IMG/VR virus record: IMGVR_UViG_3300033141_006329
Location: 159,371 to 223,370 of that record
DNA: 64,000 bases
Strand: one strand, 5' to 3'
The position numbers and the translations under genes were made by a program. The notes below the pieces were generated by a model. The model did not search any database, had not been told where the DNA came from, and saw only the letters and a program-made list of their open reading frames with translations. Positions 17,215 through 59,675 of this stretch are shown one piece after another. The stretch's first letter is position 1. Each line of letters begins with the position of its first letter.

Positions 17215-17306
17215 TTTTATTTCCTCCATTTTTAAATTTTTTAAAACCACCTTTATATATCTGTTTTTTAATGAGTTCCTCCTATTCAATCCAAACCCTT
17301 TTATAA

Positions 17307-17321
17307 AGGACAAATTAAAAA
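17307..17321 (+). promoter_or_regulatory. Putative late promoter motif
   Basis: AGGACAAATTAAAAA upstream of the sheath gene. Confidence 0.65.
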
Positions 17322-17383
17322 GACTAGGATAAACGTTTAGGATGATAATCCTATTTAAAACACTCATAAAAAAGGAGATTATA

Positions 17384-20274: not shown

Positions 20275-21269
20275 ATACTACTTCCTTTAAACAACTCACT
20301 CTCAAAATCAAAACTAATAACAGGATTATCCTTAAGATAAGTCTTGAGTTTACATCTGCTCATACCTAAAATAAGAACCTTTAAAAAATCAAATAATTCA
20401 TATAAATTCACATCTTTGATGGTTGAATGTATATTTTCATCATTATCCTCAGGAGAATATAAAATTTCCCAATATAATTTCGACATAGGATAAATTGTCA
20501 ATATAGAATAAATCTCACCATAATATTCATGTGTTTCTTCCAACCACCATCTCTTCAAATTAGGTTGTGTGGCCCACACTACTCCATTTATAAATACATT
20601 ATCATAGTTTATACGGTTTAGCCCAGAAACATTATATAATTTTTTAACGATGTCATTTGAAATTCCACTGCCTTCATAATCAATATCCAATTCAGTCAGC
20701 TTTGGTAACTGTTCTAATATACTTAAATCTAAGGAAGAATTATTTGGAATACCTAAATAACTCAATTTATCTAAATTAGAAATAGGATATACATTTTTTA
20801 ATAATTCACAATATTGCAAATCCAATCTCCTCAATTTTAATAACCCACTGATTGGACATATATCAGTAATTGGATTATTGCTTAAATTCAATTCTTCTAA
20901 ATTTAATAGATTTTCAATCCCGCATATTGTGGGAATTTTATTATCAGCAATGTATAAGTATTTTAAATTATATAGACATACTAACGGGGATATGTCCATA
21001 ATTCTATTTGAAAATAAATCCAGTTTCTTCAGACTGATAAGATTTTTTAAAGGCTTTAAATCTGTTATTGTATTGTTAAACAAATCCAACTCTACCAAAT
21101 TAATAAAATATTCTAATCCACCTATCGATTCTAATTTCTTTTCAGATAAATCTAATTTTGTTATACTCTCTACTTCATCCTTATATACAGGATCATCAGA
21201 TCTTTTATTTAAAATTTCTTTTATAATATCTCTTAATTTTCCATATTCAAATTTCAATTCTTCTCTCAT
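20271..21269 (-). CDS. Internalin-like LRR protein with ~105-aa C-terminal domain
   Basis: N-cap FEYGKLRDIIK..ITKLDL; about 7 LRRs LxxLDLxxNxIxDIxPL. Confidence 0.9.
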   Translation of the reverse strand: MREELKFEYGKLRDIIKEILNKRSDDPVYKDEVESITKLDLSEKKLESIGGLEYFINLVELDLFNNTITDLKPLKNLISLKKLDLFSNRIMDISPLVCLYNLKYLYIADNKIPTICGIENLLNLEELNLSNNPITDICPISGLLKLRRLDLQYCELLKNVYPISNLDKLSYLGIPNNSSLDLSILEQLPKLTELDIDYEGSGISNDIVKKLYNVSGLNRINYDNVFINGVVWATQPNLKRWWLEETHEYYGEIYSILTIYPMSKLYWEILYSPEDNDENIHSTIKDVNLYELFDFLKVLILGMSRCKLKTYLKDNPVISFDFESELFKGSSI

Positions 21270-23973: not shown

Positions 23974-24273
23974 TCATTCATATTCTCCTCCTACCTCATA
24001 AAACGTTGTCAATAAATCCCCCACAATTATTTGACATCTATTAGTATATTCATTATTTTCATTTTGAAAGTCTCTAGGATTACATTTACTTAAATAATTA
24101 TGCACTATCATTTTTAATTCTGCTTCAAATCTTTCATTTGGTTCTTCAAATATACAATCCCAGCAACAATTGTCCCACTTACCAACTATCAGATACAAAA
24201 AACCAGATGCTTGCCCTCTGAAGGTACTCATAATACAGTTGTCAGTACAATCATTACACATCATATCCATCAT
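23974..24273 (-). CDS. Array family protein (pair with 24273)
   Basis: C-terminal GDLLTTFYEVGG. Confidence 0.7.
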   Translation of the reverse strand: MMDMMCNDCTDNCIMSTFRGQASGFLYLIVGKWDNCCWDCIFEEPNERFEAELKMIVHNYLSKCNPRDFQNENNEYTNRCQIIVGDLLTTFYEVGGEYE

Positions 24274-24563
24274 CAGTATTCCTCCCCCTCCTCCCAAAAT
24301 ATCCTAAATAAATTATCCTCAATATTTATAAATACGTCATCATTATATAAGTTGATCCGATATTTAAGTTCTTTACATGTATGATCCTTCAAATAATTAG
24401 AAACAATATTTCCCAACACATTTTTGAACTTTTCACTTCTCGTCTCAAAAGGATAAGAGGAATAAACCGAACCTCCACTATCCATCATTAAATACCAATA
24501 ATTACTGATTGGACCTCTGACAATAGATATGGTCCAACTATCTATATGAATTAATTTGTTCAT
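24273..24563 (-). CDS. Array family protein
   Basis: C-terminal EDNLFRIFWEEG. Confidence 0.7.
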   Translation of the reverse strand: MNKLIHIDSWTISIVRGPISNYWYLMMDSGGSVYSSYPFETRSEKFKNVLGNIVSNYLKDHTCKELKYRINLYNDDVFINIEDNLFRIFWEEGEEY

Positions 24564-24575
24564 TTTTCCTTTACC

Positions 24576-24872
24576 TCAATATAACCCCACACTTGTCTTT
24601 TTCCCTCTAAACTTTTTATTGTTGACTTTAGAAGGTTTAGTAATATATTTTCTAACTTCTGGTCTATTTTTAATAATGTCACAATAAGTTTTAGCCCAAT
24701 ATGAATTAGTTATTCTTCTCCACATTTCCTCTATATCATTTATATGTCTACAATATAAAAAAGCATCATTACTCTCGGTGATTAGTTTTCTTAGTTGTTC
24801 TGTCTCGACTCCTCTCAGACATTCGTTCACTGCCCAGTGACTCTTTTCATATTTGTTTGTTAATTTATTCAT
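24576..24872 (-). CDS. Short helical-repeat protein
   Basis: ITES..AFLYC and ITNS.WAKTYC repeats. Confidence 0.6.
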   Translation of the reverse strand: MNKLTNKYEKSHWAVNECLRGVETEQLRKLITESNDAFLYCRHINDIEEMWRRITNSYWAKTYCDIIKNRPEVRKYITKPSKVNNKKFRGKKTSVGLY

Positions 24873-24880
24873 AGTGCCCC

Positions 24881-25153
24881 CTAAAATGGATCCTTCCTCA
24901 CACTTATAAAATTTTCTGCATATCCTGAAAAATTCATTTCATAAACATCATCCACATCCGCCATCTCCTCTATAAAACCTTTCTCAATCATCCATGCAAT
25001 CAATGGTACACTGTAAGGATCTTTCCCAGTATCATCAGTATAATCAGTCTGGATAGAATTTTTATCTATTTCCTTTAGTGTCCTATATAATCCAAATATT
25101 ACAGAATCAGCACCCGCAGACGTTACAAATAATTTTCCTTTAGGTATTTTCAT
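24881..25153 (-). CDS. Hypothetical protein
   Basis: ATGA-coupled ORF. Confidence 0.6.
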   Translation of the reverse strand: MKIPKGKLFVTSAGADSVIFGLYRTLKEIDKNSIQTDYTDDTGKDPYSVPLIAWMIEKGFIEEMADVDDVYEMNFSGYAENFISVRKDPF

Positions 25154-25593
25154 TTTATTTCCCTTACCATATAACGTTTTTGCTCTACTAAATTTAGTTT
25201 CTTCCCTCTAATAACTGCTTCGGGGCGATCATCGATATAATCTCCTTCATCATCTTTTTCAAATTCCTGTAAAAACTTTAAAACTTTATCTTCATCATCA
25301 ACCCCAAATTCTTCAATCCTATAATAATTTTCATCGGGTCTATCTATACAACACGCCACATAAATCTTATCTGATTTTCTTGGCTTACTGTTTCCAAAAT
25401 CTAAAATATATTGATCTAACACCATAGGATTGGATTCTATTCCTCTAATCACACCGATAACATCTCCATCTTCATTGTCAATTTCATTTGCCCAATCCTC
25501 TGCTTTTTTTATTGTATCACACGATCCCGATTGTTGATAATGATGAGGATCTTGAAATATTACATATATTTTTTCACTATTTTCTTTTTTCAT
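25150..25593 (-). CDS. Internally duplicated hypothetical protein
   Basis: Two units, each KIYV.....VIRG. Confidence 0.6.
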   Translation of the reverse strand: MKKENSEKIYVIFQDPHHYQQSGSCDTIKKAEDWANEIDNEDGDVIGVIRGIESNPMVLDQYILDFGNSKPRKSDKIYVACCIDRPDENYYRIEEFGVDDEDKVLKFLQEFEKDDEGDYIDDRPEAVIRGKKLNLVEQKRYMVREIK

Positions 25594-26003
25594 TTTAATT
25601 CTCCTTCATAAAATATTCCTAATAAATTGTCTAAATCTATGTCTACTGGTTTCAATCCAACACGCCTAAAACTAACATTAGGCTCTCCACATCCCAATGT
25701 TGTAGATATTATTCTTGCTATGCTACCTTTTGATTTAAGATCCGTTTCACTAGATATCAATTCAGAAATTACCCTTGCCAAAACATAACCAAACTTAAAG
25801 TCATTGGTATCAAATCTTTGAGTATATAAACAACGACTACTAATATATTCAATGCACCATGCCTCTGGAAATCTTTGTAGAATAATACGAATATTATAGG
25901 ATACTTTTGGTGTAAAATAATCTACAACTAATCCTTTATGCTTCTCCCATATTATTCCTTCAAATTGTCTACATGTGGGTAATTCTTTTTCGAGGTTGCT
26001 CAT
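25590..26003 (-). CDS. Array family protein
   Basis: C-terminal LDNLLGIFYEG. Confidence 0.7.
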   Translation of the reverse strand: MSNLEKELPTCRQFEGIIWEKHKGLVVDYFTPKVSYNIRIILQRFPEAWCIEYISSRCLYTQRFDTNDFKFGYVLARVISELISSETDLKSKGSIARIISTTLGCGEPNVSFRRVGLKPVDIDLDNLLGIFYEGELK

Positions 26004-26305
26004 CTTAATTCTCCTCCACCATTAAATATTTCTCCCAACAAATTATTGGTAACATAATCATCAGTTCCGATATCTAATGCGCGATGAATCATGGGATCAA
26101 CATTAAAATAGCTATTGTAGTGAGATTTTACGTTTACATGCCAACCCTTATCATCCATAGATATACTATGAAATATCAAATACTCGAACTCATAGATTAG
26201 AGAATTTGCATTTGTACTATAACCAGTATATACATTTTCTTCCCCACAATTATGATCCAGCCAGAGTTCATTTTTTGTAAATCTTGCTTTTGCAAATTCT
26301 ATCAA
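26000..26305 (-). CDS. Array family protein, subfamily A
   Basis: SMDDKGW; RALDIGTDDYVTNNLLGEIFNGG. Confidence 0.75.
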   Translation of the reverse strand: MIEFAKARFTKNELWLDHNCGEENVYTGYSTNANSLIYEFEYLIFHSISMDDKGWHVNVKSHYNSYFNVDPMIHRALDIGTDDYVTNNLLGEIFNGGGELR

Positions 26306-26613
26306 TACGTTCCTCCCTCATAATAAACTCCCTCTATCAGTTTATCGATCCCTATATGTTTATCAACCGCAGTATCCAATGCTCGAAATAAAAATGCAGG
26401 AATAGTAGAATGTTCATAAGATGCTGACATTTGAGCCTGCCAACCTTTTTGAGTCATAAACAATCTATCAAAAATTAAATCCTTCTCGTAAAAATAATAA
26501 GTGAGAGGCTCTATGCGTTCCAAACGACCTCTACTTTGATGATAATTTTGATTTCCAAAATCATAATCCATGATAATCCCGGTTTCGTTGAAGTTCGCTT
26601 CTATAATATACAT
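26302..26613 (-). CDS. Array family protein, subfamily A
   Basis: LFMTQKGW; RALDTAVDKHIGIDKLIEGVYYEG. Confidence 0.75.
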   Translation of the reverse strand: MYIIEANFNETGIIMDYDFGNQNYHQSRGRLERIEPLTYYFYEKDLIFDRLFMTQKGWQAQMSASYEHSTIPAFLFRALDTAVDKHIGIDKLIEGVYYEGGTY

Positions 26614-26627
26614 CAATATTTTTCTCC

Positions 26628-26948
26628 CTATATCATCCATCTCACTACAGTTACCTTTAAATCATCTCCGGTCCCAGGATACATTATCTTAAAGAAGTTT
26701 AACATTTGTTCCCTGCCGGCAAAGCCATGATCAATACTGTCCCTTCTTTCTACTTCTCCTATAGTGATATGCTTAACAGAAATTATCCTTCTTATAACTG
26801 CCCAGCTGGGATCCTCATTTCCTATCAGGACAGTTCCTAGTTCATAATGACGATGACCTTTTCTTATAACCGTACTTTTCTTTTTATTTTGAACATCATC
26901 TCGCATATGATGTCCTCCTATTAATATTGCTTGTACTGGTGGTTTCAT
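26628..26948 (-). CDS. ASCH/PUA-like domain protein
   Basis: KKKSTVIRKG..DHGF..MYP..VTVVRW. Confidence 0.7.
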   Translation of the reverse strand: MKPPVQAILIGGHHMRDDVQNKKKSTVIRKGHRHYELGTVLIGNEDPSWAVIRRIISVKHITIGEVERRDSIDHGFAGREQMLNFFKIMYPGTGDDLKVTVVRWMI

Positions 26949-27283
26949 TTTTCTTCCTCCTTTCCTATCTCCATAAATTGTGTCAATAATTTATCTATAG
27001 TTATTTCATAATCTTCATCCTTTAAAATCTCATTCTTCAAAATTTGGATCCCACCCTTCTTCTTTGTAAGATCTGAAACAATTTGAAATAATATCTCACC
27101 AAAATTAAAATTACGAACGACAAAGAACAACCAACCTTGATTAACGAAACGAGTTGAAGAAAGATCGATAATATAGTTACCATCTATATTGGGAAATAAT
27201 TCAAACTTACACTTATTTTCATAATATAAAACCCAGCAATCATAATTACCATGTCTCTGATTCTTTATTTTATGCCATTTCAA
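26945..27283 (-). CDS. Array family protein (likely TTG start)
   Basis: LKW N-terminus after GGAGG; C-terminal IDKLLTQFMEIG. Confidence 0.65.
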   Translation of the reverse strand: MKWHKIKNQRHGNYDCWVLYYENKCKFELFPNIDGNYIIDLSSTRFVNQGWLFFVVRNFNFGEILFQIVSDLTKKKGGIQILKNEILKDEDYEITIDKLLTQFMEIGKEEEK

Positions 27284-27284
27284 A

Positions 27285-27440
27285 TTATTCTCCCTCCTTT
27301 TCCCATTCATCCAAAAGATTTGCTGCATCACTACATCCTTCCCAATTATCAAGTCCAGATTGTTCAAGTGCTTGTAACCATAGTCGATCCTTCAATAATT
27401 CATCATATTCTTTTTTGCTTATAGTTATTTGTTCTTCCAT
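27285..27440 (-). CDS. Small protein resembling phage gp5.9-type RecBCD-inhibitor annotations (51 aa, not in ORF track)
   Basis: MEEQITISKKEYDELLKDRLWLQALEQSGLDNWEGCSDA; GGAG RBS. Confidence 0.55.
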   Translation of the reverse strand: MEEQITISKKEYDELLKDRLWLQALEQSGLDNWEGCSDAANLLDEWEKEGE

Positions 27441-27452
27441 GATCTTCTCCTT

Positions 27453-27953
27453 CTAATATCTCAACTTATATAATCTGTTAAATTCATTACTCGGTTTAGC
27501 CCCTTCTATAATATCAATTAGTTCTTTCAATTGTTTAAGATATCTCATATTATAACCTTCCCATATATTTCGTTCCTTAAACTCACCATATCCCCTAACT
27601 ATACTAAAATCGATACCTAAACCAAAACGTATTTCAATGATAGCTGGTAGATTATACTTATTAGAGAAATAGTTTTTCCATCCCTCACAGGGTGTTCCAT
27701 AAAAATTATAATGATTGTTTTTTAATACATAATCAGATAGGTTGATATAAGTAAAACTATATTTATTTTCTGGATCTTTTCCTAATGGACCATATTTATA
27801 ACGTTTTGCCCAACTCTGTAATTTTTCTTCTGTTTTCTTTCTTTTTTCACAGTATAAAAAATGATATTCTGCATCATTGTTGTTTTCAAATGTATTTTTA
27901 CAAATGGGACATTCGTATTCAGTTAAGATAGTTTTTATCTGTTTGATTTTCAT
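27453..27953 (-). CDS. Zn-finger hypothetical protein
   Basis: YECPICKNTF..H..C. Confidence 0.6.
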   Translation of the reverse strand: MKIKQIKTILTEYECPICKNTFENNNDAEYHFLYCEKRKKTEEKLQSWAKRYKYGPLGKDPENKYSFTYINLSDYVLKNNHYNFYGTPCEGWKNYFSNKYNLPAIIEIRFGLGIDFSIVRGYGEFKERNIWEGYNMRYLKQLKELIDIIEGAKPSNEFNRLYKLRY

Positions 27954-27980
27954 TATTCTCCTTATTCAACTTAAAATTGT

Positions 27981-28205
27981 TCACCAAAACTTAAGGTCAT
28001 GTTTTGTTGCACTCACCATAAATAATGTAAATAATGTTATAGGTCCAAACAAACTCAGAAATAAAGATATTTTCATATTTGTCCAATAGTTTCGTTTTGC
28101 AAAGATGGGCCATTCTCCTTGGCACCAAGCAAAGTAAAAGCCGTGAGATAAAACACTACATATTAACCATCCTAAAATTATTACTATTATTATAATCTCT
28201 TTCAT
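27981..28205 (-). CDS. Small two-TM protein (paralog of next)
   Basis: Ends HDLKFW. Confidence 0.65.
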   Translation of the reverse strand: MKEIIIIVIILGWLICSVLSHGFYFAWCQGEWPIFAKRNYWTNMKISLFLSLFGPITLFTLFMVSATKHDLKFW

Positions 28206-28221
28206 AAGTCAACTCCTTTCT

Positions 28222-28443
28222 CTACCAAAATTTTAAACCATACTTAAGCCTGTGCATTAAAAAACTAATTACCAATCCTGGAAATCCAAAACCAAACCCT
28301 ATAATCATAGAACCAATCATATATCTATAATAATCTTTTTCAAAATATCCTGTAGGTTCTCTTATGAAATAGGCAAAGTTAATACCGTAAGAAATCACAC
28401 CACTCACAATCCATATAATAATAATTACCATATTCTCACTCAT
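28222..28443 (-). CDS. Small two-TM protein
   Basis: Ends YGLKFW. Confidence 0.65.
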   Translation of the reverse strand: MSENMVIIIIWIVSGVISYGINFAYFIREPTGYFEKDYYRYMIGSMIIGFGFGFPGLVISFLMHRLKYGLKFW

Positions 28444-28738
28444 ATTTTATACCTCTCTCCCATATCTCCTCTAATAAATTATCAGTTACATATTCATCAA
28501 CAGCATTTGATACAAGATTTAACAATTGTTCACACCGACTTACTAAGTTTTCGTTCTGATACATATCGAAATGCCAACCATTCTTAGTCATAATCAAACC
28601 ACTGAATACTAAGTCGTGAAATCTATAATATATCATCTCACACTCTAATCCAATTGTATTTCCCTCATGTTTATATGTAGCGGGATATTCAGTATTATAA
28701 TATATAGTCATAATATCTTTTTCAAATACAATTTTCAT
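28436..28738 (-). CDS. Array family protein, subfamily A
   Basis: MKIVF; IMTKNGW; NAVDEYVTDNLLEEIWERG. Confidence 0.75.
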   Translation of the reverse strand: MKIVFEKDIMTIYYNTEYPATYKHEGNTIGLECEMIYYRFHDLVFSGLIMTKNGWHFDMYQNENLVSRCEQLLNLVSNAVDEYVTDNLLEEIWERGIKYE

Positions 28739-29064
28739 AGGACCGATCCCCTACTACTAAAACCAACCAATAGTTCATCAAATCCTATATAATCATCCAC
28801 ACCAAAATCTATAGCTTTAAGAAGCTTCCACTGAAATTCTGTTTCCAGAGCGCGTTTATCGCTAAACCACCCCTGATTACGCATTACCAACTTATTGTAA
28901 TACGTAGTTCTAAACCTATACGATAGAAATTCATCTTCAATGCTCAAATAACCTATGTTAACTGAGCTAATGTCTGACCCTATATAATAGTTTATATACA
29001 ATTGATCCTCTTCAAAAACTGCTTGTAAGCTAAATCTATATGTCAGTTTCACTTTTCTTGTCAT
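28735..29064 (-). CDS. Array family protein, subfamily A
   Basis: VMRNQGW; FGVDDYIGFDELLVGFSSRG. Confidence 0.75.
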   Translation of the reverse strand: MTRKVKLTYRFSLQAVFEEDQLYINYYIGSDISSVNIGYLSIEDEFLSYRFRTTYYNKLVMRNQGWFSDKRALETEFQWKLLKAIDFGVDDYIGFDELLVGFSSRGSVL

Positions 29065-29366
29065 ACCTCTAACCCTTTCCCACTAAATCCTATTAACAAA
29101 TCATCCATCTTCAAATAATTATCCATCCCTTTAGGTATTGCTCTAACCGCAACAACCATTATGCTTTCAAACCCTTCTATAATAGAAGGATAGGACCACC
29201 CATCCTTATCCATTATTATTTTTTTAACGCACAGATCTTTATCAAAATCATATGAAATATTTTCATAATCAATACATAGATTGCCCTGATGAGCTGGAGC
29301 ATTGGCGTTGGGAAAATAAATAAATATTTCCTTATCTGTAACTGTTACTTCGACTGGTATATTCAT
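29061..29366 (-). CDS. Array family protein, subfamily A
   Basis: IMDKDGW; GMDNYLKMDDLLIGFSGKG. Confidence 0.75.
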   Translation of the reverse strand: MNIPVEVTVTDKEIFIYFPNANAPAHQGNLCIDYENISYDFDKDLCVKKIIMDKDGWSYPSIIEGFESIMVVAVRAIPKGMDNYLKMDDLLIGFSGKGLEV

Positions 29367-29668
29367 GATAATACTCCTGCTCCTTTCTCACCAAATTTCA
29401 ATAGTAAATCCTCAAATTTTATATATTTATCTATCCCTATTGATAGTGCCCTGTATAATTCATTCATGGCATTATCATACCCACCCTCGACATTAGGTAC
29501 ATTCCAACCATCTTTGGTTATAGTTAAATAATCGAAGCATATATCATCGAATTGATAAGTAGTGTATCCTTCTCCAACCATTCTTCCTTCATGCATTGTT
29601 TTGCTGAAGTCATAAAATAATATCATCTTTTTGTTTTCAAATGTTATCTCCAATCTTTCATATGCCAT
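29363..29668 (-). CDS. Array family protein, subfamily A
   Basis: ITKDGW; GIDKYIKFEDLLLKFGEKG. Confidence 0.75.
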   Translation of the reverse strand: MAYERLEITFENKKMILFYDFSKTMHEGRMVGEGYTTYQFDDICFDYLTITKDGWNVPNVEGGYDNAMNELYRALSIGIDKYIKFEDLLLKFGEKGAGVLS

Positions 29669-29990
29669 AGACTATTCCTCCCGTCCCAATATTAAACAAA
29701 AGATCCTCAAACTTTATGTATACATCAGTATAATAATCCATAGCCGCAAATAGATCATTCATAGCATCATTCTTATTTTTGGAAGTAATCCTATTAACAA
29801 CCCAGCCCTCTTCCCGCAGTGTTAGTGTATTAAAACAGACTCCTGAAAATTCATATGTAAGAAAATTTTCATCTCCAATACATATGGAACCCTCATAACT
29901 CGCATAACATCCACCATTTTTGTAGTAGTTTATCCTTATCGCAAATCCTGAAAAAGTTATATTTAGATCACAATCGTCTCCTGTATCCAT
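29658..29990 (-). CDS. Array family protein, subfamily A
   Basis: LREEGW; TDVYIKFEDLLFNIGTGG. Confidence 0.75.
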   Translation of the reverse strand: MDTGDDCDLNITFSGFAIRINYYKNGGCYASYEGSICIGDENFLTYEFSGVCFNTLTLREEGWVVNRITSKNKNDAMNDLFAAMDYYTDVYIKFEDLLFNIGTGGIVYGI

Positions 29991-30003
29991 CAGATTTTCT
30001 CCT

Positions 30004-30345
30004 TCATATTGTTATTCCTTTCCTGCCGAAATTGTCCATAAATTCTATAATTCCTATATAATCATCTACCCCTGCATTTATCGCTTTGTATAAATAATTC
30101 ATCTCAACTATCTCCGAATCTTGATAGAGTATTTCATTTATGTACCAACCATTCTTATTCATTATTAGTCTATTGAAATATAGTTCATACTCTTTAGGAA
30201 ATGAATAGGTCATATCCTCAACTTTCAAAAACCCCATATATACTGCAGGTATATCGATCATTTTTCCTGTTATACTCGGCATATAAATAGATATTGTCAT
30301 GGCAAGTATATCATCTGTGAATTTCACCTTTGTAAGATACATCAC
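30004..30345 (-). CDS. Array family protein, subfamily A
   Basis: IMNKNGW; AGVDDYIGIIEFMDNFGRKG. Confidence 0.75.
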   Translation of the reverse strand: MMYLTKVKFTDDILAMTISIYMPSITGKMIDIPAVYMGFLKVEDMTYSFPKEYELYFNRLIMNKNGWYINEILYQDSEIVEMNYLYKAINAGVDDYIGIIEFMDNFGRKGITI

Positions 30346-30634
30346 TTATTCCTTTCTCTCCAAACTTCACTAATAAATCAGTTGTAAATACATCAACTCC
30401 TCTCATTGCTTCTCTTCGAAGATTAAGTTCGAATGCGCGTTCAATGCAACCGTTTATATCCACATACCAACTACCATCTTCACGCATTTCTATTCCTTTG
30501 ATACTTGTAAGTCCAAATTTGTAATATATGGGATCGCATTGAGTTAGATATCCTTCAATTGTATATTCATCATCAGAAAAAGATCCATACCCATAGGTCA
30601 CAATCATTTTATCATCCTCAAATCTTATTTTCAT
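30311..30634 (-). CDS. Array family protein, subfamily A
   Basis: MKIRF; MREDGSW; GVDVFTTDLLVKFGEKG. Confidence 0.75.
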   Translation of the reverse strand: MKIRFEDDKMIVTYGYGSFSDDEYTIEGYLTQCDPIYYKFGLTSIKGIEMREDGSWYVDINGCIERAFELNLRREAMRGVDVFTTDLLVKFGEKGISDVSYKGEIHR

Positions 30635-30644
30635 ATTTCATCCC
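30616..30644. repeat. 29-nt exact direct repeat spanning a gene junction (copy 1)
   Basis: CCTCAAATCTTATTTTCATATTTCATCCC, also at 30894-30922. Confidence 0.85.
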
Positions 30645-30912
30645 CTTTATAATATAACATAGTTAACAGATTATCAGTTATGTATTCATCAATTCCGCAA
30701 TTAGCCGATTTACAGAATAAGATAGAATCTTTTTTGGATGGGATTTTATGAGGTTCTGTGATAAAAATCCAACCCCCCTCATTCAAACTTAAAACGGTCT
30801 TAAAATTTTTAAAATCATAATATATATGATCGGAGTCAAAGTTTAGAGAGCCTATATTGTTGATATTAGTAAATTCTATGGTCATCTTTTTTGCCTCAAA
30901 TCTTATTTTCAT
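30631..30912 (-). CDS. Array family protein, subfamily A
   Basis: MKIRF; LNEGGW; GIDEYITDNLLTMLYYKG. Confidence 0.75.
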   Translation of the reverse strand: MKIRFEAKKMTIEFTNINNIGSLNFDSDHIYYDFKNFKTVLSLNEGGWIFITEPHKIPSKKDSILFCKSANCGIDEYITDNLLTMLYYKGDEI

Positions 30913-30922
30913 ATTTCATCCC
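30894..30922. repeat. 29-nt exact direct repeat (copy 2)
   Basis: Same sequence as 30616-30644. Confidence 0.85.
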
Positions 30923-31192
30923 CTTGTAATATATACTATTCAACAAATTATCAGTTACGTAATCGTCTATACCATCAGTTGTTTTTCTTAATACCATATA
31001 TATAATATCATTATAACCACCACTTACATTAGGTGTATCACAACATTTCTTTGTTATTATCAGGGTATCGAAACGCAAATTTTTAAATTTATAAGAAATA
31101 CATTCATCGTTATAATAATCTAAATTACCCATATGTTGATAATATTTATTATATGTCACAATCATCTGATCTTCTGTAAATTTCACCTTCAT
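30896..31192 (-). CDS. Array family protein, subfamily A
   Basis: MKVKF; GIDDYVTDNLLNSIYYKG. Confidence 0.75.
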   Translation of the reverse strand: MKVKFTEDQMIVTYNKYYQHMGNLDYYNDECISYKFKNLRFDTLIITKKCCDTPNVSGGYNDIIYMVLRKTTDGIDDYVTDNLLNSIYYKGMKYENKI

Positions 31193-31488
31193 ATTTCATC
31201 TCCTATTTGATACATACCTTCCAGAATATTATCTGTTACATATTTATCAACAGCTACTGACATTGCCTTATATAATTTACACATGCTATCATTATCATCA
31301 GAGTTATCTTTATAATCATGTGCAACCCAACCATTCTCGGTCATCTCTAAACTTTGAAAAATTAACTCATGTGTAAAATCATATATTAACCATTCACGCA
31401 ATAATCCAGCAAGTGTAATTGTATCATCGCCGCCACTATTACAGGTTATAAACATCTTTTTTGGTTTAAATTCTACTACCATATCCAT
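31189..31488 (-). CDS. Array family protein, subfamily A
   Basis: EMTENGW; AVDKYVTDNILEGMYQIG. Confidence 0.75.
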   Translation of the reverse strand: MDMVVEFKPKKMFITCNSGGDDTITLAGLLREWLIYDFTHELIFQSLEMTENGWVAHDYKDNSDDNDSMCKLYKAMSVAVDKYVTDNILEGMYQIGDEI

Positions 31489-31817
31489 CCACCTATTCCT
31501 CCCTCAAATAACACATTCAATAATTCATCTGTATTGATACTAATCCAAATATTATGGAATGCTGTTTTCATAATAATTTTTATCATATCTCCAAGTTCAT
31601 TATCTACAAAAAACTCATCCAATATCTTAACTAAAACTTCTACAAAATGGGGGGAAGTATTGGAAAAGGATATGTTATAATGAAAAACACTTTTGAGATA
31701 TATAGTAGTAAACCTATGATTCCAAAATATCTGCAAATTTCTATTTTTACCCAATCCCATATAATAACAAAGTTTGCTATTCTCAGTTTTTCTAATCCTG
31801 CGTCCTGCCGGTTTCAT
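31476..31817 (-). CDS. Array family protein
   Basis: C-terminal TDELLNVLFEGG. Confidence 0.7.
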   Translation of the reverse strand: MKPAGRRIRKTENSKLCYYMGLGKNRNLQIFWNHRFTTIYLKSVFHYNISFSNTSPHFVEVLVKILDEFFVDNELGDMIKIIMKTAFHNIWISINTDELLNVLFEGGIGGWIW

Positions 31818-32140
31818 ATCTTGACTCCTTTCTCATACATCTCTCCCACAAAAGAATCGATATCTACCGATACAGTAGCATGATTATTCCTAAGTAATAC
31901 ATCTTTAAAATAACTAAAGCCTTTCTTATCAATAGCATTCATCATAACTTCCTTAAGTATATTTCTAAAGGACTTTTCGCCCAATTCGAACGTAATAACG
32001 GCAAAGTCTGACTCCGCCCAATAATAATTACATGCTAAATGCCACCTATCTGAATAATATGAATGAATCACATCATTCCCCTCCAAACATTTATCAACAT
32101 CCATACAATAATCAATTGCGTTACTGCGAACCCATTCCAT
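31814..32140 (-). CDS. Array family protein (pair with 32121)
   Basis: MEW..CMDVDKCLEG; IDSFVGEMYEKG. Confidence 0.7.
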   Translation of the reverse strand: MEWVRSNAIDYCMDVDKCLEGNDVIHSYYSDRWHLACNYYWAESDFAVITFELGEKSFRNILKEVMMNAIDKKGFSYFKDVLLRNNHATVSVDIDSFVGEMYEKGVKI

Positions 32141-32462
32141 ATTCTCCTCCTTTCTCATACATTGTTTCAATTAATAAACTAATATCTATGATCAGCTCTG
32201 CGCCAATATTCCTATTGATCGAATCCTTAAAATCTTCAAATCCTTTTCTATCTACCGCATCTATCATAAATTCCTTAAGTGTATCTCTAAACGATTCTCC
32301 CACATGATTAAATATAATACAACAGTATTCAAAATGCAACATATAATTAGTAGAAAGTATCCACCTATCATCGGAACAATAAGAATAAATTATACAATCA
32401 CCCTCAACACACATATCCACATCTTTACAAAATCCTACAGAAGCTTCGTGATACCATCTCAT
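32121..32462 (-). CDS. Array family protein
   Basis: MRW..CKDVDMCVEG; ISLLIETMYEKGG. Confidence 0.7.
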   Translation of the reverse strand: MRWYHEASVGFCKDVDMCVEGDCIIYSYCSDDRWILSTNYMLHFEYCCIIFNHVGESFRDTLKEFMIDAVDRKGFEDFKDSINRNIGAELIIDISLLIETMYEKGGEYGMGSQ

Positions 32463-32752
32463 ATATTTGCTCCTTTCTCAAACATCTCAAGTAATAAATC
32501 ATCATTAAAGCCGAATACAGAATAATTAAATACACTGATAGATTCCTCAGTAAACTCGAAATTCTTAACAATATTTTTCAAATCTTTTTCAAGTTCTTTC
32601 ACCCGGCTGTTATTAACCAAAAATGCTATATAGCCCCAATCGTCTCCTAACTTCGTCCTTCCAATTCGTACCGTTACCCAACCATAATGAATATTTGGAA
32701 TATAACTCTCTGTACTATATACATTCAGAAACTTATCATCTTCAGGTATCAT
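32459..32752 (-). CDS. Array family protein
   Basis: C-terminal NDDLLLEMFEKG. Confidence 0.7.
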   Translation of the reverse strand: MIPEDDKFLNVYSTESYIPNIHYGWVTVRIGRTKLGDDWGYIAFLVNNSRVKELEKDLKNIVKNFEFTEESISVFNYSVFGFNDDLLLEMFEKGANI

Positions 32753-33119
32753 AACTAGTCCCTTCCTTATTAAAAATACGCATCAAATCATCAGTATCTA
32801 ATATTATAGTACCGATTTCCGGAATAAATTCACTTAGTAAACCACCCTTATAATATTTAGTCTCCATTATTTCAGTTAAGGATTTTATTTGTCCCATACT
32901 GATATTATGCATATAATAAAATGTAATATAATTTTGAATGTAATGACAATTTGAACTAGTATCCTTAAGCTGAAAGCTCACAGTATTTGATAAACTCAGT
33001 CCCACATAAAGAGATTTTGCCTTATCTGGAATATCTGCGCTATAAGATTTTACCCACCAATATTTAGTCGTGTCGACCTTCTTATATACCCACTCACCTA
33101 ATTTTTTTATGTGTTTCAT
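32742..33119 (-). CDS. Array family protein
   Basis: C-terminal TDDLMRIFNKEG. Confidence 0.7.
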   Translation of the reverse strand: MKHIKKLGEWVYKKVDTTKYWWVKSYSADIPDKAKSLYVGLSLSNTVSFQLKDTSSNCHYIQNYITFYYMHNISMGQIKSLTEIMETKYYKGGLLSEFIPEIGTIILDTDDLMRIFNKEGTSYDT

Positions 33120-33481
33120 ATCATAACTCCTTCAATACAAATAATATTCAAATATTCTTCGGTTTCAAACGATGTTGTTATGGGGTTGTAAATATTTTCA
33201 CCTGTAATAATTAATTTTTTTATATCCTGCTCTTTGTCATACTTCTCATCTAAAATAGTTTTTATATATTTGTGTAATCTTTCATCTGCATTTTGAAATT
33301 CTAATGTGTATAGAGACGACATGGCTGAGGGGCTAGTTTTTGTAACTGAAAGCAATACATCATTCACGCGATAATAATAATCTAATCTTATTGTCAAATC
33401 ACTATGATAACTAGTCTCGGTGCCATCTAAATATATATTTCCTGTCAATCCGCTTCTTTTCCAACTTAGCATATAATACAT
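33116..33481 (-). CDS. Array family protein (paralog of 62711)
   Basis: TGNIYL..LDYY; TEEYLNIICIEG. Confidence 0.7.
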   Translation of the reverse strand: MYYMLSWKRSGLTGNIYLDGTETSYHSDLTIRLDYYYRVNDVLLSVTKTSPSAMSSLYTLEFQNADERLHKYIKTILDEKYDKEQDIKKLIITGENIYNPITTSFETEEYLNIICIEGVMI

Positions 33482-33801
33482 CCTCCCGTTAACATAATGT
33501 TCAAGGTGTCTTTTTCCCTTAAGCGATAACTGTTCTTGTCCGGGTCTATATTATCTAATTTATTATACAATTCTTCCATACTCAAATCACTAAGAAGATC
33601 ACAAGCAATATCAACTAGTTTGCGCTTGTTTCTTCCCATATCGCACTCGAATATAATACCACTACCACGTTCTACCTCTCTTCTGAACATTATTATCTGT
33701 ATATATGTCTTCACGAAATACCTTATAATCAACTCAAACTCACCAGACCGATATGAATAGATATTTCCCTTGCATTTGAATTGATCTCTATTTATCCTCA
33801 T
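33466..33801 (-). CDS. Array family protein (pair with 33788)
   Basis: C-terminal KDTLNIMLTGG. Confidence 0.7.
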   Translation of the reverse strand: MRINRDQFKCKGNIYSYRSGEFELIIRYFVKTYIQIIMFRREVERGSGIIFECDMGRNKRKLVDIACDLLSDLSMEELYNKLDNIDPDKNSYRLREKDTLNIMLTGGCIIC

Positions 33802-34126
33802 ATCCTACACCCTCCCCTATCATAATTTCTAATATATCAACCTCCTTAAATGTTGGGCTATATTTTTCTGGATCTACTTTTTCAAAATTCTCATACAATA
33901 TATTCATAGGTGTTTCACTAATTATCTCACACATAATATCGGTAACTTTATCGATGCAATTTTCCAGATAATACTTAAAGCGAATGCCAAACCCTATCTC
34001 CTCATTGTCCTTAAAAATTAATACCTGGGGCTGATCAAATCGTATAACAACGACAAACTTACCGTGTTGATACCTTCGATAATTACTATTGCGAGAAACC
34101 TCAAATAAATCCTTATAATTTTTCAT
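33788..34126 (-). CDS. Array family protein
   Basis: C-terminal VDILEIMIGEG. Confidence 0.7.
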   Translation of the reverse strand: MKNYKDLFEVSRNSNYRRYQHGKFVVVIRFDQPQVLIFKDNEEIGFGIRFKYYLENCIDKVTDIMCEIISETPMNILYENFEKVDPEKYSPTFKEVDILEIMIGEGVGYEDK

Positions 34127-34484
34127 AACTCTCTCCTGAATAATAAAAACAGTTAATGATCCCACATAGATTAATATACATACTTTCCATTGTACAATCT
34201 TTATAATGCATCTTATTCAAATGCCAATATAATCGTTCAAAACCAAATGTTGATAATAGAGAGGAAATCATATACAGATTAAAATCTAATATACCCGGCA
34301 ACCTAAAGTTTAAATTTATTGCATTATTGCTATTATTAAAAATACGTAACAGAATCCGATCAATAGGATCATGTATTATGTAATATATAGGGCTAATTCC
34401 CAACTTCTCTGTTTTATGATATGTAAAACCAAAATAATCCTTGCTCACCTGCCAATTGATGTTATATCTAACTATATCTTTCAT
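34113..34484 (-). CDS. Array family protein
   Basis: INW N-terminus; LCGIINCFYYSG. Confidence 0.65.
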   Translation of the reverse strand: MKDIVRYNINWQVSKDYFGFTYHKTEKLGISPIYYIIHDPIDRILLRIFNNSNNAINLNFRLPGILDFNLYMISSLLSTFGFERLYWHLNKMHYKDCTMESMYINLCGIINCFYYSGESYEKL

Positions 34485-34836
34485 CCATACCTACCCCCTT
34501 AAATATCCAATCCTCATCATGTTCAATATAATAAACATCTTCCATAATATCCCCAATATGCGGATATGCTCCTAACATACCTGCCTCAATACAATTCCTA
34601 ATAATACTAAATAAGTAGATCAGATCAATATGATTTAATCCTTTAACAGTGCATATTACTTGCATGTTACTAGACCCCTCTACATTCGGAGCTATTAAAA
34701 CCACATATTTATAGTTACCATATAATTTTATGTATACAGGATAATCATACTTATTTTCAAAGTTACTCTCTGTAGTCCATACATCATCATCTCTAAACCT
34801 CCATTCATATCCTAAACAAACTATATATCTATTCAT
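34468..34836 (-). CDS. Array family protein (divergent tag)
   Basis: YEW N-terminus; HDEDWIFKG. Confidence 0.6.
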   Translation of the reverse strand: MNRYIVCLGYEWRFRDDDVWTTESNFENKYDYPVYIKLYGNYKYVVLIAPNVEGSSNMQVICTVKGLNHIDLIYLFSIIRNCIEAGMLGAYPHIGDIMEDVYYIEHDEDWIFKGVGMDERYS

Positions 34837-35165
34837 ATTTCCACCCCCTCATACATGAAATCGATCTCATAATATGTCATATGTAAAGCCGACATAAAAT
34901 GATCAAACTGTTCAATGCCATAATGTAACAAATCTAGTATACAATTAATAAAAATCCGAGCCTCGTTAGTATCACAATTCATAGTCAATACTGAATAAGG
35001 ATGAGAAAAGTTAATAGCACACCCGCCAGTACATTTGAATATCTCGATGGATTTATTTTCAATATTCATCTTATAATATGTCTCATTATCGATATCATAT
35101 CCTGAACTCCAGCTAGAATTTCTCTTCATATCCCACGCCTCCATGCATGAAATCAATTTCCTCAT
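34833..35165 (-). CDS. Array family protein (pair with 35113)
   Basis: FSHPYSVLTMNC; YEIDFMYEG. Confidence 0.65.
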   Translation of the reverse strand: MRKLISCMEAWDMKRNSSWSSGYDIDNETYYKMNIENKSIEIFKCTGGCAINFSHPYSVLTMNCDTNEARIFINCILDLLHYGIEQFDHFMSALHMTYYEIDFMYEGVEI

Positions 35166-35415
35166 GATGTATATATAATTTTGTCATAAAATACTCAATA
35201 TTCATGTCCAATAATTTCCTAACAATATCAATGAAAATTACACCATCTAATATATTACAACTCATTGTTAAACACTGGTAAGGGTGAGAATAAACAACAA
35301 CACAACCACCAAGATAACATTCAAATAGGTCTAATCTCTTTTTACCACCAAATGTATAATATAAATTACTATCAGTGTCATGATCACTCATCCAACCATT
35401 CGGATAATTTTTCAT
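35113..35415 (-). CDS. Array family protein, first gene of the array
   Basis: YSHPYQCLTMSC; EEIDFMHGG; start MKNYP after AAAGGAG. Confidence 0.65.
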   Translation of the reverse strand: MKNYPNGWMSDHDTDSNLYYTFGGKKRLDLFECYLGGCVVVYSHPYQCLTMSCNILDGVIFIDIVRKLLDMNIEYFMTKLYIHHEEIDFMHGGVGYEEKF

Positions 35416-35444
35416 TTTTATATCTCCTTTCAAAAATTAACAAT

Positions 35445-35677: not shown

Positions 35678-36412
35678 ATGGGATTACCAAATAGTTTTAA
35701 AAGTATTACAGAGAATGGTTTTTCTAGAAAATGGGGAGGCGCACAATCAAGTACTGTTGATCCTTATATTTCAGGATATTTTCATACTAACTGGGCATAT
35801 ATACCAAATACATTGGTAGATCAAGTCAAAGTACCCGCAGGACCGGATGGGATAGAAAATATAGGCAATATTCAAGAGATACTAAGATCATCTTGTCTTG
35901 CTGTAACACTACCTGGTGGTACGGTAAACAAGGCTGAGTTTTCAGGGCTTGGTGGGATCAAATGGGCCGCGCCTACAAATGTAGAATTCGATAATACAGT
36001 AACCGTAAAATTCTTAGAATTTTCTGGATTACCAATAATGTCTATTGTTAGTGGTTGGGTAAGATTGATAAGAGATTATAGAGCAGGTGTCAGTCCACTT
36101 AAAGCCGGTACCTATGGTAAATCCAATTATGCTGGTACTATGTATTACTGGACCACTCAACCAGATGGTATACAGGTTGAGTATGCTGCTTGTATATCAG
36201 GCATGTTTCCAATGAAGGATCCTATGGATCAATTTGGTGGAGATCTTACTACTTATGATAAATTAGAAATGGATATTGATTTTAATGCTGATTACGTATG
36301 GCGAGAGAGTTGGGTTTACGATAGATGCACAACATTGTCTGCGGCATTGGCTGCACAGATTGAAACGCCGATTAATGCTTATGGTGCTACTACTGAACCT
36401 GCTGGCGCATAA
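35678..36412 (+). CDS. Tail tube protein (T4 gp19-like)
   Basis: CLAVTLPG..PTNVEFDNTVTVKFLE..GMFP..MDIDFNADY pattern. Confidence 0.85.
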   Translation: MGLPNSFKSITENGFSRKWGGAQSSTVDPYISGYFHTNWAYIPNTLVDQVKVPAGPDGIENIGNIQEILRSSCLAVTLPGGTVNKAEFSGLGGIKWAAPTNVEFDNTVTVKFLEFSGLPIMSIVSGWVRLIRDYRAGVSPLKAGTYGKSNYAGTMYYWTTQPDGIQVEYAACISGMFPMKDPMDQFGGDLTTYDKLEMDIDFNADYVWRESWVYDRCTTLSAALAAQIETPINAYGATTEPAGA

Positions 36413-59366: not shown

Positions 59367-59402
59367 ATATTTATCCTCTAATCAATATTTTAATTATTTA
59401 CA

Positions 59403-59612: not shown

Positions 59613-59647
59613 ATTATATTCTCCTTTGTTAAAATTAATTCACCGTT

Positions 59648-59665: not shown

Positions 59666-59675
59666 GGACCCAACT

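What the first reader, a model, noticed from the sequence alone, without database searches (positions are those of the whole stretch)
23974..35415. Array of about 28 divergent small proteins sharing one C-terminal tag: a candidate phage effector repertoire with a common docking signal
Seen: about 28 co-oriented ORFs of ~90-137 aa, mostly joined by ATGA or short overlaps. Their bodies often cannot be aligned by eye, yet almost all end in the same amphipathic motif [DE]-x-L-[LIF]-x-x-[FIM]-x-x-x-G. Examples: DLLTTFYEVG, DNLFRIFWEEG, DNLLGIFYEG, DKLLTQFMEIG, DDLLIGFSGKG, DELLNVLFEGG, DDLLLEMFEKG. The terminal G/GG is probably forced by the next gene's overlapping GGAG RBS, but the D-x-L-L-x-x-F helix sits upstream of the RBS and is not explained by it. 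Known: short terminal peptides act as address tags in phages, such as the T4 internal-protein capsid targeting sequence and the C-terminal LDFL clamp-binding motif of T4 gp43/gp55/gp33; the PIP box ends L-x-x-F-F. Inference: a variable body plus constant tag system that docks many different effectors on one hub (capsid, clamp, oligomer or secretion partner), plausibly for anti-defence or host takeover. I do not recognise a described family.
Basis: partly seen in the sequence, partly recalled or inferred. Interest (0 to 1): 0.9.

Follow-up and report, generated by a model that had tools for sequence, protein, structure and literature searches.

The report
Giant small-protein family in jumbo phage
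An uncultivated 306-kb phage gives about an eighth of its genome to roughly a hundred tandemly duplicated genes for small proteins that differ widely but end in the same short helix; the family has no relatives outside this phage lineage, and the shared ending may be a common docking or pairing surface.

Summary
On the minus strand, 23974-35433 holds 36 coupled small ORFs, and 28 end in h-x-h-x-[DE]-x-[LI]-[LF]-x-x-[FLI]-[YWF]-x-x-G. A second array lies at 58519-64000 and a third just upstream of the window. Together they hold about 90-100 such genes, about 13% of a 306-kb T4-like jumbo phage contig.

With RBS codons masked, the motif occurs in 30/67 array ORFs against 1/207 controls. It occurs in 0/12 coupled non-family genes embedded in the arrays. 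Conservation sits in codon positions 1 and 2, so it is selected at protein level.

The bodies are not unrelated. With tails removed, at least 41 genes form one superfamily and 12 form family A, alongside several small groups. AlphaFold gives a beta-meander plus helices, with the tail helix least confident. The same domain ends three LRR proteins.

Three of five indels against a close relative have endpoints inside tail/SD-coding homology, so the arrays change size by unequal recombination there.

There are no homologues in Pfam, PHROGs, PDB or BFVD. Large protein searches found only this phage lineage. A shared docking or pairing role for the tail is plausible but untested.

The parts
23974..35433 (-). 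Array 1: 36 translationally coupled small ORFs. 28 carry the C-terminal tail helix. The array sits between the sheath and tube-like genes.
   Evidence: related phages have sheath and tube adjacent
28436..31488 (-). Family A block, 10 paralogues: 31189-31488, 30896-31192, 30631-30912, 30311-30634, 30004-30345, 29658-29990, 29363-29668, 29061-29366, 28735-29064, 28436-28738
   Evidence: BLAST cluster. Alignment A1 shows 22-37% identity. AF2 gives six strands plus a long helix 63-95.
26000..26640 (-). Two more family A genes (26302-26640, 26000-26305)
23974..24563 (-). Family B genes 24273-24563 and 23974-24297 (core of superfamily B)
   Evidence: AF2 gives four strands, helices 44-58 and 63-73, and the tail helix 85-92.
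31814..32462 (-). Family B genes 32121-32462 and 31814-32170
25590..26003 (-). Superfamily B member with a long Pro/Gly-rich linker before the tail
26945..27367 (-). Superfamily B member. The listed TTG start overlaps the gp5.9-like gene, so the real start is probably an internal ATG.
31476..31817 (-). Superfamily B member. Its counterpart in the relative is only 39% identical, while neighbouring genes are 72-87% identical.
32459..33119 (-). Two tail-bearing genes (32742-33119, 32459-32752) with at most borderline body similarity to superfamily B
33116..34165 (-). Superfamily B members 33116-33481, 33466-33801 and 33788-34165
34113..34836 (-). Two singletons with degenerate tails (34468-34836, 34113-34484)
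34833..35433 (-). Paralogue pair with a short tail variant (E-I-D-F-M-x-x-G). It is homologous to the C-terminal domain of an LRR protein located upstream of the window.
   Evidence: A6
24576..25593 (-). Three embedded coupled genes without the tail (25150-25593, 24881-25153, 24576-24872)
26628..26948 (-). Embedded coupled gene without the tail
27285..27440 (-). Embedded T7 gp5.9-type RecBCD inhibitor homologue. It is not a member of the tail family.
   Evidence: PF25708 at 57.1 bits against a cut-off of 24.5, matching profile positions 4-46 of 46. The PHROG hits are annotated as RecBCD inhibitors.
27453..28443 (-). Embedded non-family genes: a 166-aa protein (27453-27953) and two small hydrophobic paralogues ending in LKFW (27981-28205, 28222-28443)
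30351..30379 (-). Crossover tract in the tail of 30311-30634. It pairs with 29382-29410 in the tail of 29363-29668. The relative L011 lacks the 969 nt (three genes) in between.
29382..29410 (-). Partner crossover tract of 30351-30379
31178..31242 (-). Crossover tract in the tail of 31189-31488. It pairs with 30897-30961 in the tail of 30896-31192. The relative L013 lacks that gene.
30897..30961 (-). Partner crossover tract of 31178-31242
27280..27296 (-). 17-nt SD-region homology. It pairs with 26303-26319. The relative lacks the 961 nt (three genes) in between.
26303..26319 (-). Partner tract of 27280-27296
58519..64000 (-). Array 2, window part. Tail-bearing genes: 58519-58929, 60357-60689, 60686-61087, 61065-61472, 61456-61836, 61787-62119, 62116-62442, 62439-62714, 62711-63073, 63070-63444, 63441-63731 and 63683-64000 (cut by the window end). 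Small non-family ORFs lie at 59403-60284. The array continues about 6.4 kb beyond the window.
16399..17367 (-). LRR protein whose C-terminal ~110 aa look like a superfamily B unit and end in tail-like segments
   Evidence: Pfam LRR_4; sequence read by eye
20271..21269 (-). LRR protein whose C-terminal ~110 aa look like a superfamily B unit with a short tail (E-L-F-K-G)
   Evidence: Pfam LRR families; sequence read by eye
17342..19078 (+). Tail sheath gene, left landmark of the insertion site
35678..36412 (+). Virion structural (tube-position) gene, right landmark of the insertion site

Best explanation
The finding is part of a multigene family restricted to one phage lineage. It comprises about 90-100 genes in at least three arrays, about 40 kb of a 306-kb T4-like jumbo phage contig.

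Shown:
- Each gene encodes a small, mildly acidic protein of about 80-140 aa. In the two families modelled, it has an N-terminal beta-meander of 4-6 strands followed by helices.
- The last helix is short, acid-capped and Gly-capped. Its hydrophobic residues fall at i, i+1, i+4 and i+5.
- This tail is conserved at amino-acid level.
- Most bodies are paralogues: superfamily B has at least 41 members, family A has 12, and there are several small groups.
- The same domain is fused to the C-terminus of an LRR protein.
- The arrays gain and lose genes by unequal homologous recombination inside the tail/SD-coding junction. The process is accordion-like.
- Orthologues are under purifying selection.

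Inferred:
- The proteins form a diversified repertoire of binders directed at the host, for host takeover or counter-defence.
- They are made from long coupled transcripts.
- The variable sheet and loops give target specificity.
- The conserved amphipathic tail is a common interaction surface, either pairing family members with each other or docking them on one shared partner.
For: - Real coding genes: dN/dS is 0.24-0.56 in 12 orthologue pairs against a relative.
- Protein-level tail: information lies in codon positions 1 and 2 only, and Leu codon usage in the motif equals the background. Codon identity at positions with the same amino acid is only 1.13 times expectation. The enrichment holds with the RBS masked, p = 2.7e-20. 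The Gly is kept without a coupled downstream start.
- Paralogy.
- Fold. The tail helix has the lowest pLDDT (39-59) although it is the best-conserved segment. That pattern suits a surface that is not packed in the monomer.
- Variable Pro/Gly-rich linkers of about 5-20 aa precede the tail in superfamily B.
- LRR fusion: an LRR protein carries a C-terminal unit 47% identical (E 1e-22 to 1e-24) to small array proteins.
- Recombination: three of five indels against the relative end in shared tracts of 17-65 nt in tail/SD-coding sequence.
- Context: a gp5.9-type RecBCD inhibitor lies inside array 1. The arrays are on the strand opposite the structural genes. The sheath-tube site holds other accessory genes in relatives.
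- Lineage restriction.
Against: - No partner has been identified, and no multimer modelling or experiment was possible.
- Between orthologues the tail is only slightly more conserved than the body (84% against 79% amino-acid identity, p = 0.21).
- Low pLDDT at a C-terminus with a shallow alignment is weak evidence.
- Early expression is inferred from orientation only; the promoter scan was uninformative.
- Family A and superfamily B may simply be one very old fold whose last helix evolves slowest.
Confidence: 0.55

Rival explanations
1. Ordinary fold element. The tail is simply the last core helix of one ancient small fold and packs on its own sheet. It is the slowest-evolving part because it must fold. 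It also overlaps the next gene's SD and start, and it is the crossover site that every surviving duplicate must keep intact. There is no shared partner.
For: - Bodies are largely homologous.
- The two AF2 models have parallel layouts, with strands at nearly the same positions followed by helices.
- Crossovers fall in the tails.
- The i, i+1, i+4, i+5 hydrophobic pattern with capping residues is what a helix packing against a sheet looks like.
- The tail is not significantly more conserved than the body between orthologues.
Against: - The tail has the lowest model confidence despite the highest conservation.
- Variable-length loop-like linkers precede it.
- Families A, C and D share nothing detectable with superfamily B except the tail.
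- There is no nucleotide-level constraint that overlap or gene conversion would leave.
Confidence: 0.3
2. Clamp-binding tail. The acidic-hydrophobic C-terminal helix tethers the proteins to the phage's gp45-type sliding clamp or the host beta clamp, as the C-terminal epitopes of T4 gp43, gp55 and gp33 do.
For: - T4 clamp ligands use short, interchangeable, hydrophobic and acidic C-terminal motifs (PMC2988020, read).
- The tail register [DE]-x-x-h-x-x-h-aromatic can be laid on the PIP-box pattern Q-x-x-[LIM]-x-x-[FY]-[FY] (own knowledge; for the tail).
- The phage is T4-like: gp23-type capsid protein, sheath and baseplate.
Against: - The motif is followed by 6-8 more residues, so it is not at the extreme end.
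- About a hundred competing clamp ligands would seem harmful to replication.
- No clamp, polymerase or gp55 gene was found in the ~93 kb examined, so their C-termini could not be compared.
Confidence: 0.06
3. Immunity-type or inhibitor array. The proteins are paralogous inhibitors of nucleases or toxins, like the arrays of immunity genes in polymorphic toxin loci. The tail is a family hallmark without a hub.
For: - The organisation is tandem arrays of small, divergent alpha/beta proteins.
- The family A profile weakly and colinearly matches a T6SS immunity protein (4noo_B, E 0.27).
- Family B resembles small inhibitor-like folds weakly (MmoD with probability 0.72 and E 0.18, plus an AcrF1 complex).
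Against: - None of these matches is significant.
- No toxin genes are adjacent.
- PADLOC finds nothing.
Confidence: 0.05
4. Packaging address. The tail targets the proteins into the capsid or tail for injection, like T4 internal proteins.
For: The arrays lie next to structural genes (sheath, tube and gp23). T4 internal proteins combine a constant address with variable bodies (own knowledge).
Against: - The T4 address is N-terminal and removed by the prohead protease. Here the N-termini differ between families and the constant part is C-terminal.
- The genes run opposite to the late structural genes.
- About a hundred cargo species is implausible.
Confidence: 0.03
5. By-product of translational coupling or an RNA/DNA signal in the junction.
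For: The Gly codons coincide with a GGAG-type SD 7-10 nt before the next start, and many junctions are ATGA.
Against: - Twelve coupled non-family genes in the same arrays lack the motif.
- Third codon positions carry almost no information in the helix.
- dS is not reduced there.
- The Gly persists without a coupled start.
Confidence: 0.01

Closest known systems
Genomic accordions and lineage-specific multigene families of large DNA viruses (poxvirus gene amplification; giant-virus paralogue families; also proposed for large phages, PMC13359090)
   Same: The family is tandemly amplified, copy number differs between close relatives, expansion is lineage-specific, and the presumed setting is a host arms race.
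   Different: Here the repeat unit is a ~330-nt gene, and the crossover homology is a short tract of 17-65 nt coding the protein's own C-terminal helix plus the next gene's SD. The copies are ancient and saturated at synonymous sites rather than recent amplicons. The scale, about 100 copies in a phage, is unusual to my knowledge.
Poxvirus ankyrin-repeat/PRANC (F-box-like) families (own knowledge)
   Same: This is a large viral paralogue family with variable binding bodies and one short, constant, helical C-terminal element that docks on a shared cellular hub. The LRR fusions seen here parallel repeat-domain plus docking-motif architectures.
   Different: No F-box domain is present; the tail has about 12 residues, not 40-50. 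Bacteria have no SCF ligase. No hub is known here. No Pfam family is hit.
Sliding-clamp-binding C-terminal epitopes of T4 gp43, gp55 and gp33 (PMC2988020)
   Same: Both are short, acidic plus hydrophobic, C-terminal and transferable between unrelated bodies. The phage is T4-like.
   Different: The tail is not at the extreme C-terminus, it is present on about 100 small proteins, and binding is untested.
PeSL cassettes that mediate modular shuffling in T4-type hyperplastic regions (PMC2839356, PMC4122927)
   Same: Short conserved junction sequences between small accessory genes act as recombination sites for insertion, deletion and replacement.
   Different: PeSLs are intergenic promoter plus stem-loop cassettes. 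Here the genes overlap, there is no intergenic cassette, and the homology is coding sequence. Promoter-like and terminator-like sites are only slightly above shuffled expectation, by about 2 sd and under 1 sd.
T4 internal proteins with a capsid targeting sequence (own knowledge)
   Same: Both combine a constant address with variable bodies in a hyperplastic locus.
   Different: The T4 address is N-terminal and cleaved. Here the constant part is C-terminal.

Membership tests
Tandem paralogue (accordion-type) multigene family | Members are homologous to each other | tested here: met
   Family A has 12 members at 22-37% identity. Superfamily B has 41-42 members by HMM iteration on bodies only at E < 1e-3. 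Several small groups remain unlinked.
Tandem paralogue (accordion-type) multigene family | Copy number varies between close relatives, with breakpoints in repeat homology | tested here: met
   There are five indels against L011/L013. Three have endpoints in tail/SD tracts of 17-65 nt shared by paralogues.
T7 gp5.9 RecBCD inhibitor (PF25708) | Pfam score above the gathering cut-off over the whole profile | tested here: met
   This holds only for 27285-27440: 57.1 bits against a cut-off of 24.5, profile positions 4-46 of 46. No tail-family member hits it.
T4 internal proteins / capsid targeting sequence | Conserved N-terminal targeting peptide shared by otherwise different proteins | tested here: not met
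   N-termini are conserved only within families, and the shared element is C-terminal.
T4 internal proteins / capsid targeting sequence | Presence in virions | not testable with these tools
   The phage is uncultivated and no proteome is available.
Clamp-binding motif proteins (T4 gp43/gp55/gp33 type; PIP-like) | Short hydrophobic and acidic motif at the C-terminus | tested here: inconclusive
   Composition and register are compatible, but 6-8 residues follow the motif. The definition is taken from PMC2988020.
Clamp-binding motif proteins (T4 gp43/gp55/gp33 type; PIP-like) | Same motif on the phage's own polymerase or late sigma factor, and binding to the clamp | not tested
   These genes are not in the ~93 kb of the contig that was read (window, L012, L015, L017).
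PeSL recombination cassettes | Intergenic early promoter plus stem-loop between genes | tested here: not met
   The genes overlap. There are 131 promoter-like sites against 110 +/- 10 expected, and 6 terminator-like sites against 4.5 +/- 2.
Immunity proteins of polymorphic toxin / T6SS systems | Significant sequence or fold similarity to a known immunity family, and an adjacent toxin | tested here: not met
   The best hit is 4noo_B at E 0.27. Foldseek gives no hit at E <= 0.001. No toxin gene is adjacent, and PADLOC is empty.
F-box / PRANC | Pfam F-box-type domain of about 40-50 aa | tested here: not met
   There is no Pfam hit for any of 47 members, and the tail is only about 12 residues.

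The most novel reading that the evidence does not exclude
The tail is a universal docking (or hetero-pairing) signal. On this reading, one phage plugs about a hundred diversified small binder domains, and LRR domains fused to such units, into a single hub through one 12-residue C-terminal helix. This would be a bacterial-virus counterpart of the poxvirus ankyrin/PRANC adaptor families. The tail-coding DNA would also serve as the crossover site that lets the repertoire expand and contract.
Probability: 0.25. Interest if true: 0.9.

Novelty: new variant of a known kind. Interest (0 to 1): 0.7.

Why it matters
- Multigene families of about a hundred members are familiar in giant eukaryotic viruses. 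I know of none on this scale in a phage, and this one takes about 13% of a 306-kb contig.
- The family gives a concrete, sequence-resolved example of how a jumbo phage genome grows: unequal crossover in a short coding junction.
- It offers a natural library of small folded proteins under selection, which may be counter-defence or host-takeover factors.
- If the shared helix is a docking or pairing signal, it would define a new address-tag system in phages and a handle for finding the hub.
- If the helix is only a fold element, the family is still a new orphan fold family and a clean case of accordion-type evolution in a phage.

Tried and rejected
- DNA similarity to 50,697 phage records gave no match, near or distant. 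The sheath protein is only about 25% identical to any isolate.
- Pfam, PHROGs, NCBIfam and PADLOC on 47 array members gave only the gp5.9-like gene.
- Foldseek of both models against PDB, and of the family A model against BFVD, gave nothing at E <= 0.001.
- PDB profile searches gave only non-significant hits.
- The family A profile against 1.84 billion representatives hit only its own lineage, plus one 1423-aa Gram-positive surface protein with tandem repeats (E 3.8e-5 over 6 stretches). I judged that hit spurious.
- The search for related loci failed on alignments A1 and A5 because no conserved stretch was long enough.
- The metagenome scan with 25150-25593 found nothing. The IMG/VR scans with 25150-25593 and with A6 returned only the phage itself, and the genome scan with A6 found nothing.
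- hhalign on bodies alone, window plus array 2 set, gave only weak links with a best probability of 58%. Links became clear only after the third array and the relative were added.
- An RNA/DNA-level signal was rejected.
- A nascent-peptide effect at the stop codon was considered. I rejected it because genes with long overlaps, such as 30311-30634, place the motif by the next gene's start and not by their own stop.
- The tail-like ending of the structural gene 10014-11003, and the loose-regex hits at 39236 and 57195, are at chance frequency: 3/46 against 7% of internal windows.
- The first two of the five literature searches found nothing relevant on phage paralogue arrays.
- The first full hhalign run timed out.

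Full report
**Where the window comes from**

The window is the last 64 kb of IMG/VR contig IMGVR_UViG_3300033141_006329 (223,370 nt). That contig is itself the first part of a 306,137-nt JGI contig, Ga0366833_1000001; window position 1 is near record position 159,372.

The genome is a T4-like jumbo myovirus:
- tail sheath, T4-type baseplate hub and wedge, NAD-dependent ligase and CCA-adding enzyme lie in the window;
- a gp23-type major capsid gene lies just upstream of the window.

No isolate is close. There is no DNA match in 50,697 phage records, and the sheath protein is about 25% identical to the best isolate.

**The observation**

On the minus strand, 23974-35433 holds 36 co-oriented ORFs.

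Anchoring the tails gives the consensus h-x-h-x-[DE]-x-[LI]-[LF]-x-x-[FLI]-[YWF]-x-x-G followed by 3-5 residues. The first Leu most often lies 12 residues before the stop.

The motif is far from chance:
- With the last six residues masked (SD and spacer codons), it is present in 30 of 67 array ORFs. It is present in 1 of 207 ORFs from the rest of the window and from nine related phage loci (Fisher p = 2.7e-20).
- It occurs in 3.4% of internal 16-residue windows.
- It occurs in none of 12 coupled but unrelated genes embedded in the arrays.

**Protein level or nucleotide level**

- In 42 anchored tails the information sits in codon positions 1 and 2. Third positions are near background, and Leu codon usage in the motif equals usage elsewhere.
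- Where two tails have the same amino acid, they share the codon only 1.13 times as often as codon usage predicts.
- Between orthologues, dS is not reduced in the helix.

The helix is therefore kept by selection on the protein.

However:
- it is present in 97% of tail genes against 26% of other genes;
- coupled non-family genes encode their SD with other residues;
- five tail genes whose next gene starts 27-210 nt away still keep it.

The Gly is thus also part of the protein motif, plausibly a helix C-cap (inference).

**The feature is much larger than reported**

- A second array begins in the window (58519-64000, 12 tail genes). It continues for 6.4 kb beyond the window with about 15 more, interrupted by a TnpB-like gene. 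There, two families alternate, which shows duplication of a two-gene unit.
- A third array starts just upstream of the window, beyond the ligase gene. It runs about 16.6 kb, with about 45 genes of which about 40 have the tail, up to a DUF559 endonuclease and the capsid gene.
- Across 115 array ORFs, 68 show all five scored motif features and 100 show at least four. That looser criterion also passes 5 of the 12 embedded non-family genes, so the honest total is about 90-100.
- The three arrays cover about 40 kb, or 13% of the contig.

**Are the bodies unrelated?**

Not mostly.
- BLAST gives a 12-member family A at 22-37% identity and several small clusters.
- With the last 18-20 residues removed, profile comparison within the window set was weak.
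- After adding the relative and the third array, HMM iteration on bodies alone at E < 1e-3 gathers 41-42 genes from all three arrays into one superfamily B.
- The superfamily B alignment shows a shared N-terminal Trp, a central helix of pattern F-x-x-x-L-x-x-I-[LI], a variable Pro/Gly-rich linker, and then the tail.
- Family A, a four-member family C, a family D of 4-9 members and a five-member group around 34833-35433 stay separate by sequence.

**Structure**

- AlphaFold2 on family A (16 sequences, pLDDT 72.9) gives six strands and one long helix, residues 63-95, that includes the tail.
- AlphaFold2 on family B (6 sequences, pLDDT 73.7) gives four strands, two helices and a separate tail helix at 85-92.
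- The first four strands fall at nearly the same positions in both models, so one ancient fold is possible.
- In both models the tail has the lowest confidence (39-59) although it is the best-conserved segment.
- Neither model has a significant structural neighbour in the libraries searched (both against PDB, family A also against BFVD). The best hits are beta-beta-beta-beta-alpha units such as PUR repeats and MmoD, at E 0.18-0.6.
- PDB sequence profiles give only a non-significant match to a T6SS immunity protein.

**LRR fusions**

A 324-aa LRR protein in the third array carries a C-terminal unit of about 100 aa. That unit is 47% identical (E 1e-22 to 1e-24) to two neighbouring small proteins and 31% identical to 34833-35165. 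The two LRR proteins in the window (16399-17367, 20271-21269) also end in a unit of the same look with a short tail; this is judged by eye only. The small protein is therefore a domain that can be combined with a repeat-type binding domain.

**Dynamics**

A close relative (Logan SRR3715733, loci L011 and L013) has orthologues at 58-93% identity but a shorter array. Five indels separate the two arrays. In three of them the two flanks overlap on a tract shared by two paralogues:
- 29 nt in the tails of 30311-30634 and 29363-29668 (three genes lost or gained);
- 65 nt in the tails of 31189-31488 and 30896-31192 (one gene);
- 17 nt in an SD region (three genes).

Unequal homologous recombination in the tail/SD junction therefore changes copy number. 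Two positions hold counterparts only 31-39% identical among neighbours at 72-87%, which suggests replacement or fast divergence. Orthologues are under purifying selection: dN/dS is 0.46 for the body, 0.24 for the helix and 0.56 for the SD tail. The body-helix difference in amino-acid identity is not significant, p = 0.21.

**Context**

More distant relatives have the sheath and tube genes adjacent, or other small accessory genes between them. So the 16-kb block 19165-35433 occupies a variable site. Array 1 contains a bona fide T7 gp5.9-type RecBCD inhibitor homologue whose own C-terminus belongs to that family's profile. All arrays run opposite to the structural genes. The proteins are mildly acidic, with a median pI of 5.1.

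**Distribution**

- The family A profile against 1.84 billion representative proteins finds only this lineage.
- Word-indexed searches with A1 and A5 find the same.
- IMG/VR, GTDB genomes and JGI metagenome scans find no further relative.

**Interpretation**

Shown:
- This is a very large, lineage-restricted family of real protein-coding genes.
- Its tail is conserved at protein level.
- Its bodies are mostly paralogous.
- It grows and shrinks by crossover in the tail-coding junction.

Inferred:
- It is a repertoire of host-directed binders.
- The amphipathic tail is a common interaction surface, used for pairing or docking.

The main rival is that the tail is only the last core helix of the fold. 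The clamp-binding reading remains open because the clamp ligand genes were not within reach. T4 clamp ligands do use interchangeable acidic-hydrophobic C-terminal motifs (PMC2988020). Related concepts are PeSL-mediated shuffling (PMC2839356, PMC4122927) and accordion-type expansion in large viruses (PMC13359090).

Noticed in passing
window 6370-7620 (-); L012 7578-8654: A TnpB/IS605 OrfB-type gene (PF01385, PF07282) sits among the structural genes. A second TnpB-like gene interrupts array 2 beyond the window.
   Followed up: partly
window 14435-15628 (+), 19165-20274 (-), 22241-23251 (-): Three paralogous genes combine repeated DUF7487 motifs with a restriction-endonuclease-like C-terminus (the Pfam hits are on the latter two; the first is linked by BLAST). 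They are probably homing endonucleases. They flank the sheath gene and array 1, and the relative L011 has one at the same place.
   Followed up: partly
window 23737-23916 (-): A 59-aa ORF just downstream of array 1 weakly matches the N-terminal half of the gp5.9 RecBCD-inhibitor profile (E 3.5e-4, below the cut-off). It may be a second, diverged copy.
   Followed up: partly
window 27981-28205 and 28222-28443 (-): Two small hydrophobic paralogues (73-74 aa) both end in G-L-K-F-W or D-L-K-F-W. They are embedded in array 1 and conserved in the relative. Their function is unknown.
   Followed up: no
window 23307-23711 (-): A 134-aa protein has an N-terminal CxxC...CxxC and a weak MqsA-antitoxin-like match (E 0.005, below the cut-off).
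   Followed up: no
L010 7577-9775 (-): A distant relative (tube-like protein 49% identical) has a different array at the same sheath-tube site. It holds about nine Cys-rich 67-111-aa paralogues that begin M-K-L-I and share their own C-terminal pattern. Locus L007 has yet another small paralogue set ending in E-Y-N-G-T.
   Followed up: partly
window 19096-19127: A perfect 12-14-bp hairpin is flanked by A and T runs. It reads as a terminator on both strands, between the sheath gene and the first endonuclease-like gene.
   Followed up: no
window 44863-50607 (-): A 1914-aa ORF downstream of the baseplate genes was not analysed.
   Followed up: no
window 64000 = end of the IMG/VR contig: The IMG/VR entry (223,370 nt) stops in the middle of array 2, while the JGI contig continues to 306,137 nt. 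The viral-database record is therefore a truncated genome.
   Followed up: yes
L015 15209-15976; L012 1-181 and 15898-16581: Auxiliary genes lie next to the arrays outside the finding: an RNA ligase inside array 3, and a NAMPT-type enzyme and a DnaJ-domain protein near array 2.
   Followed up: no
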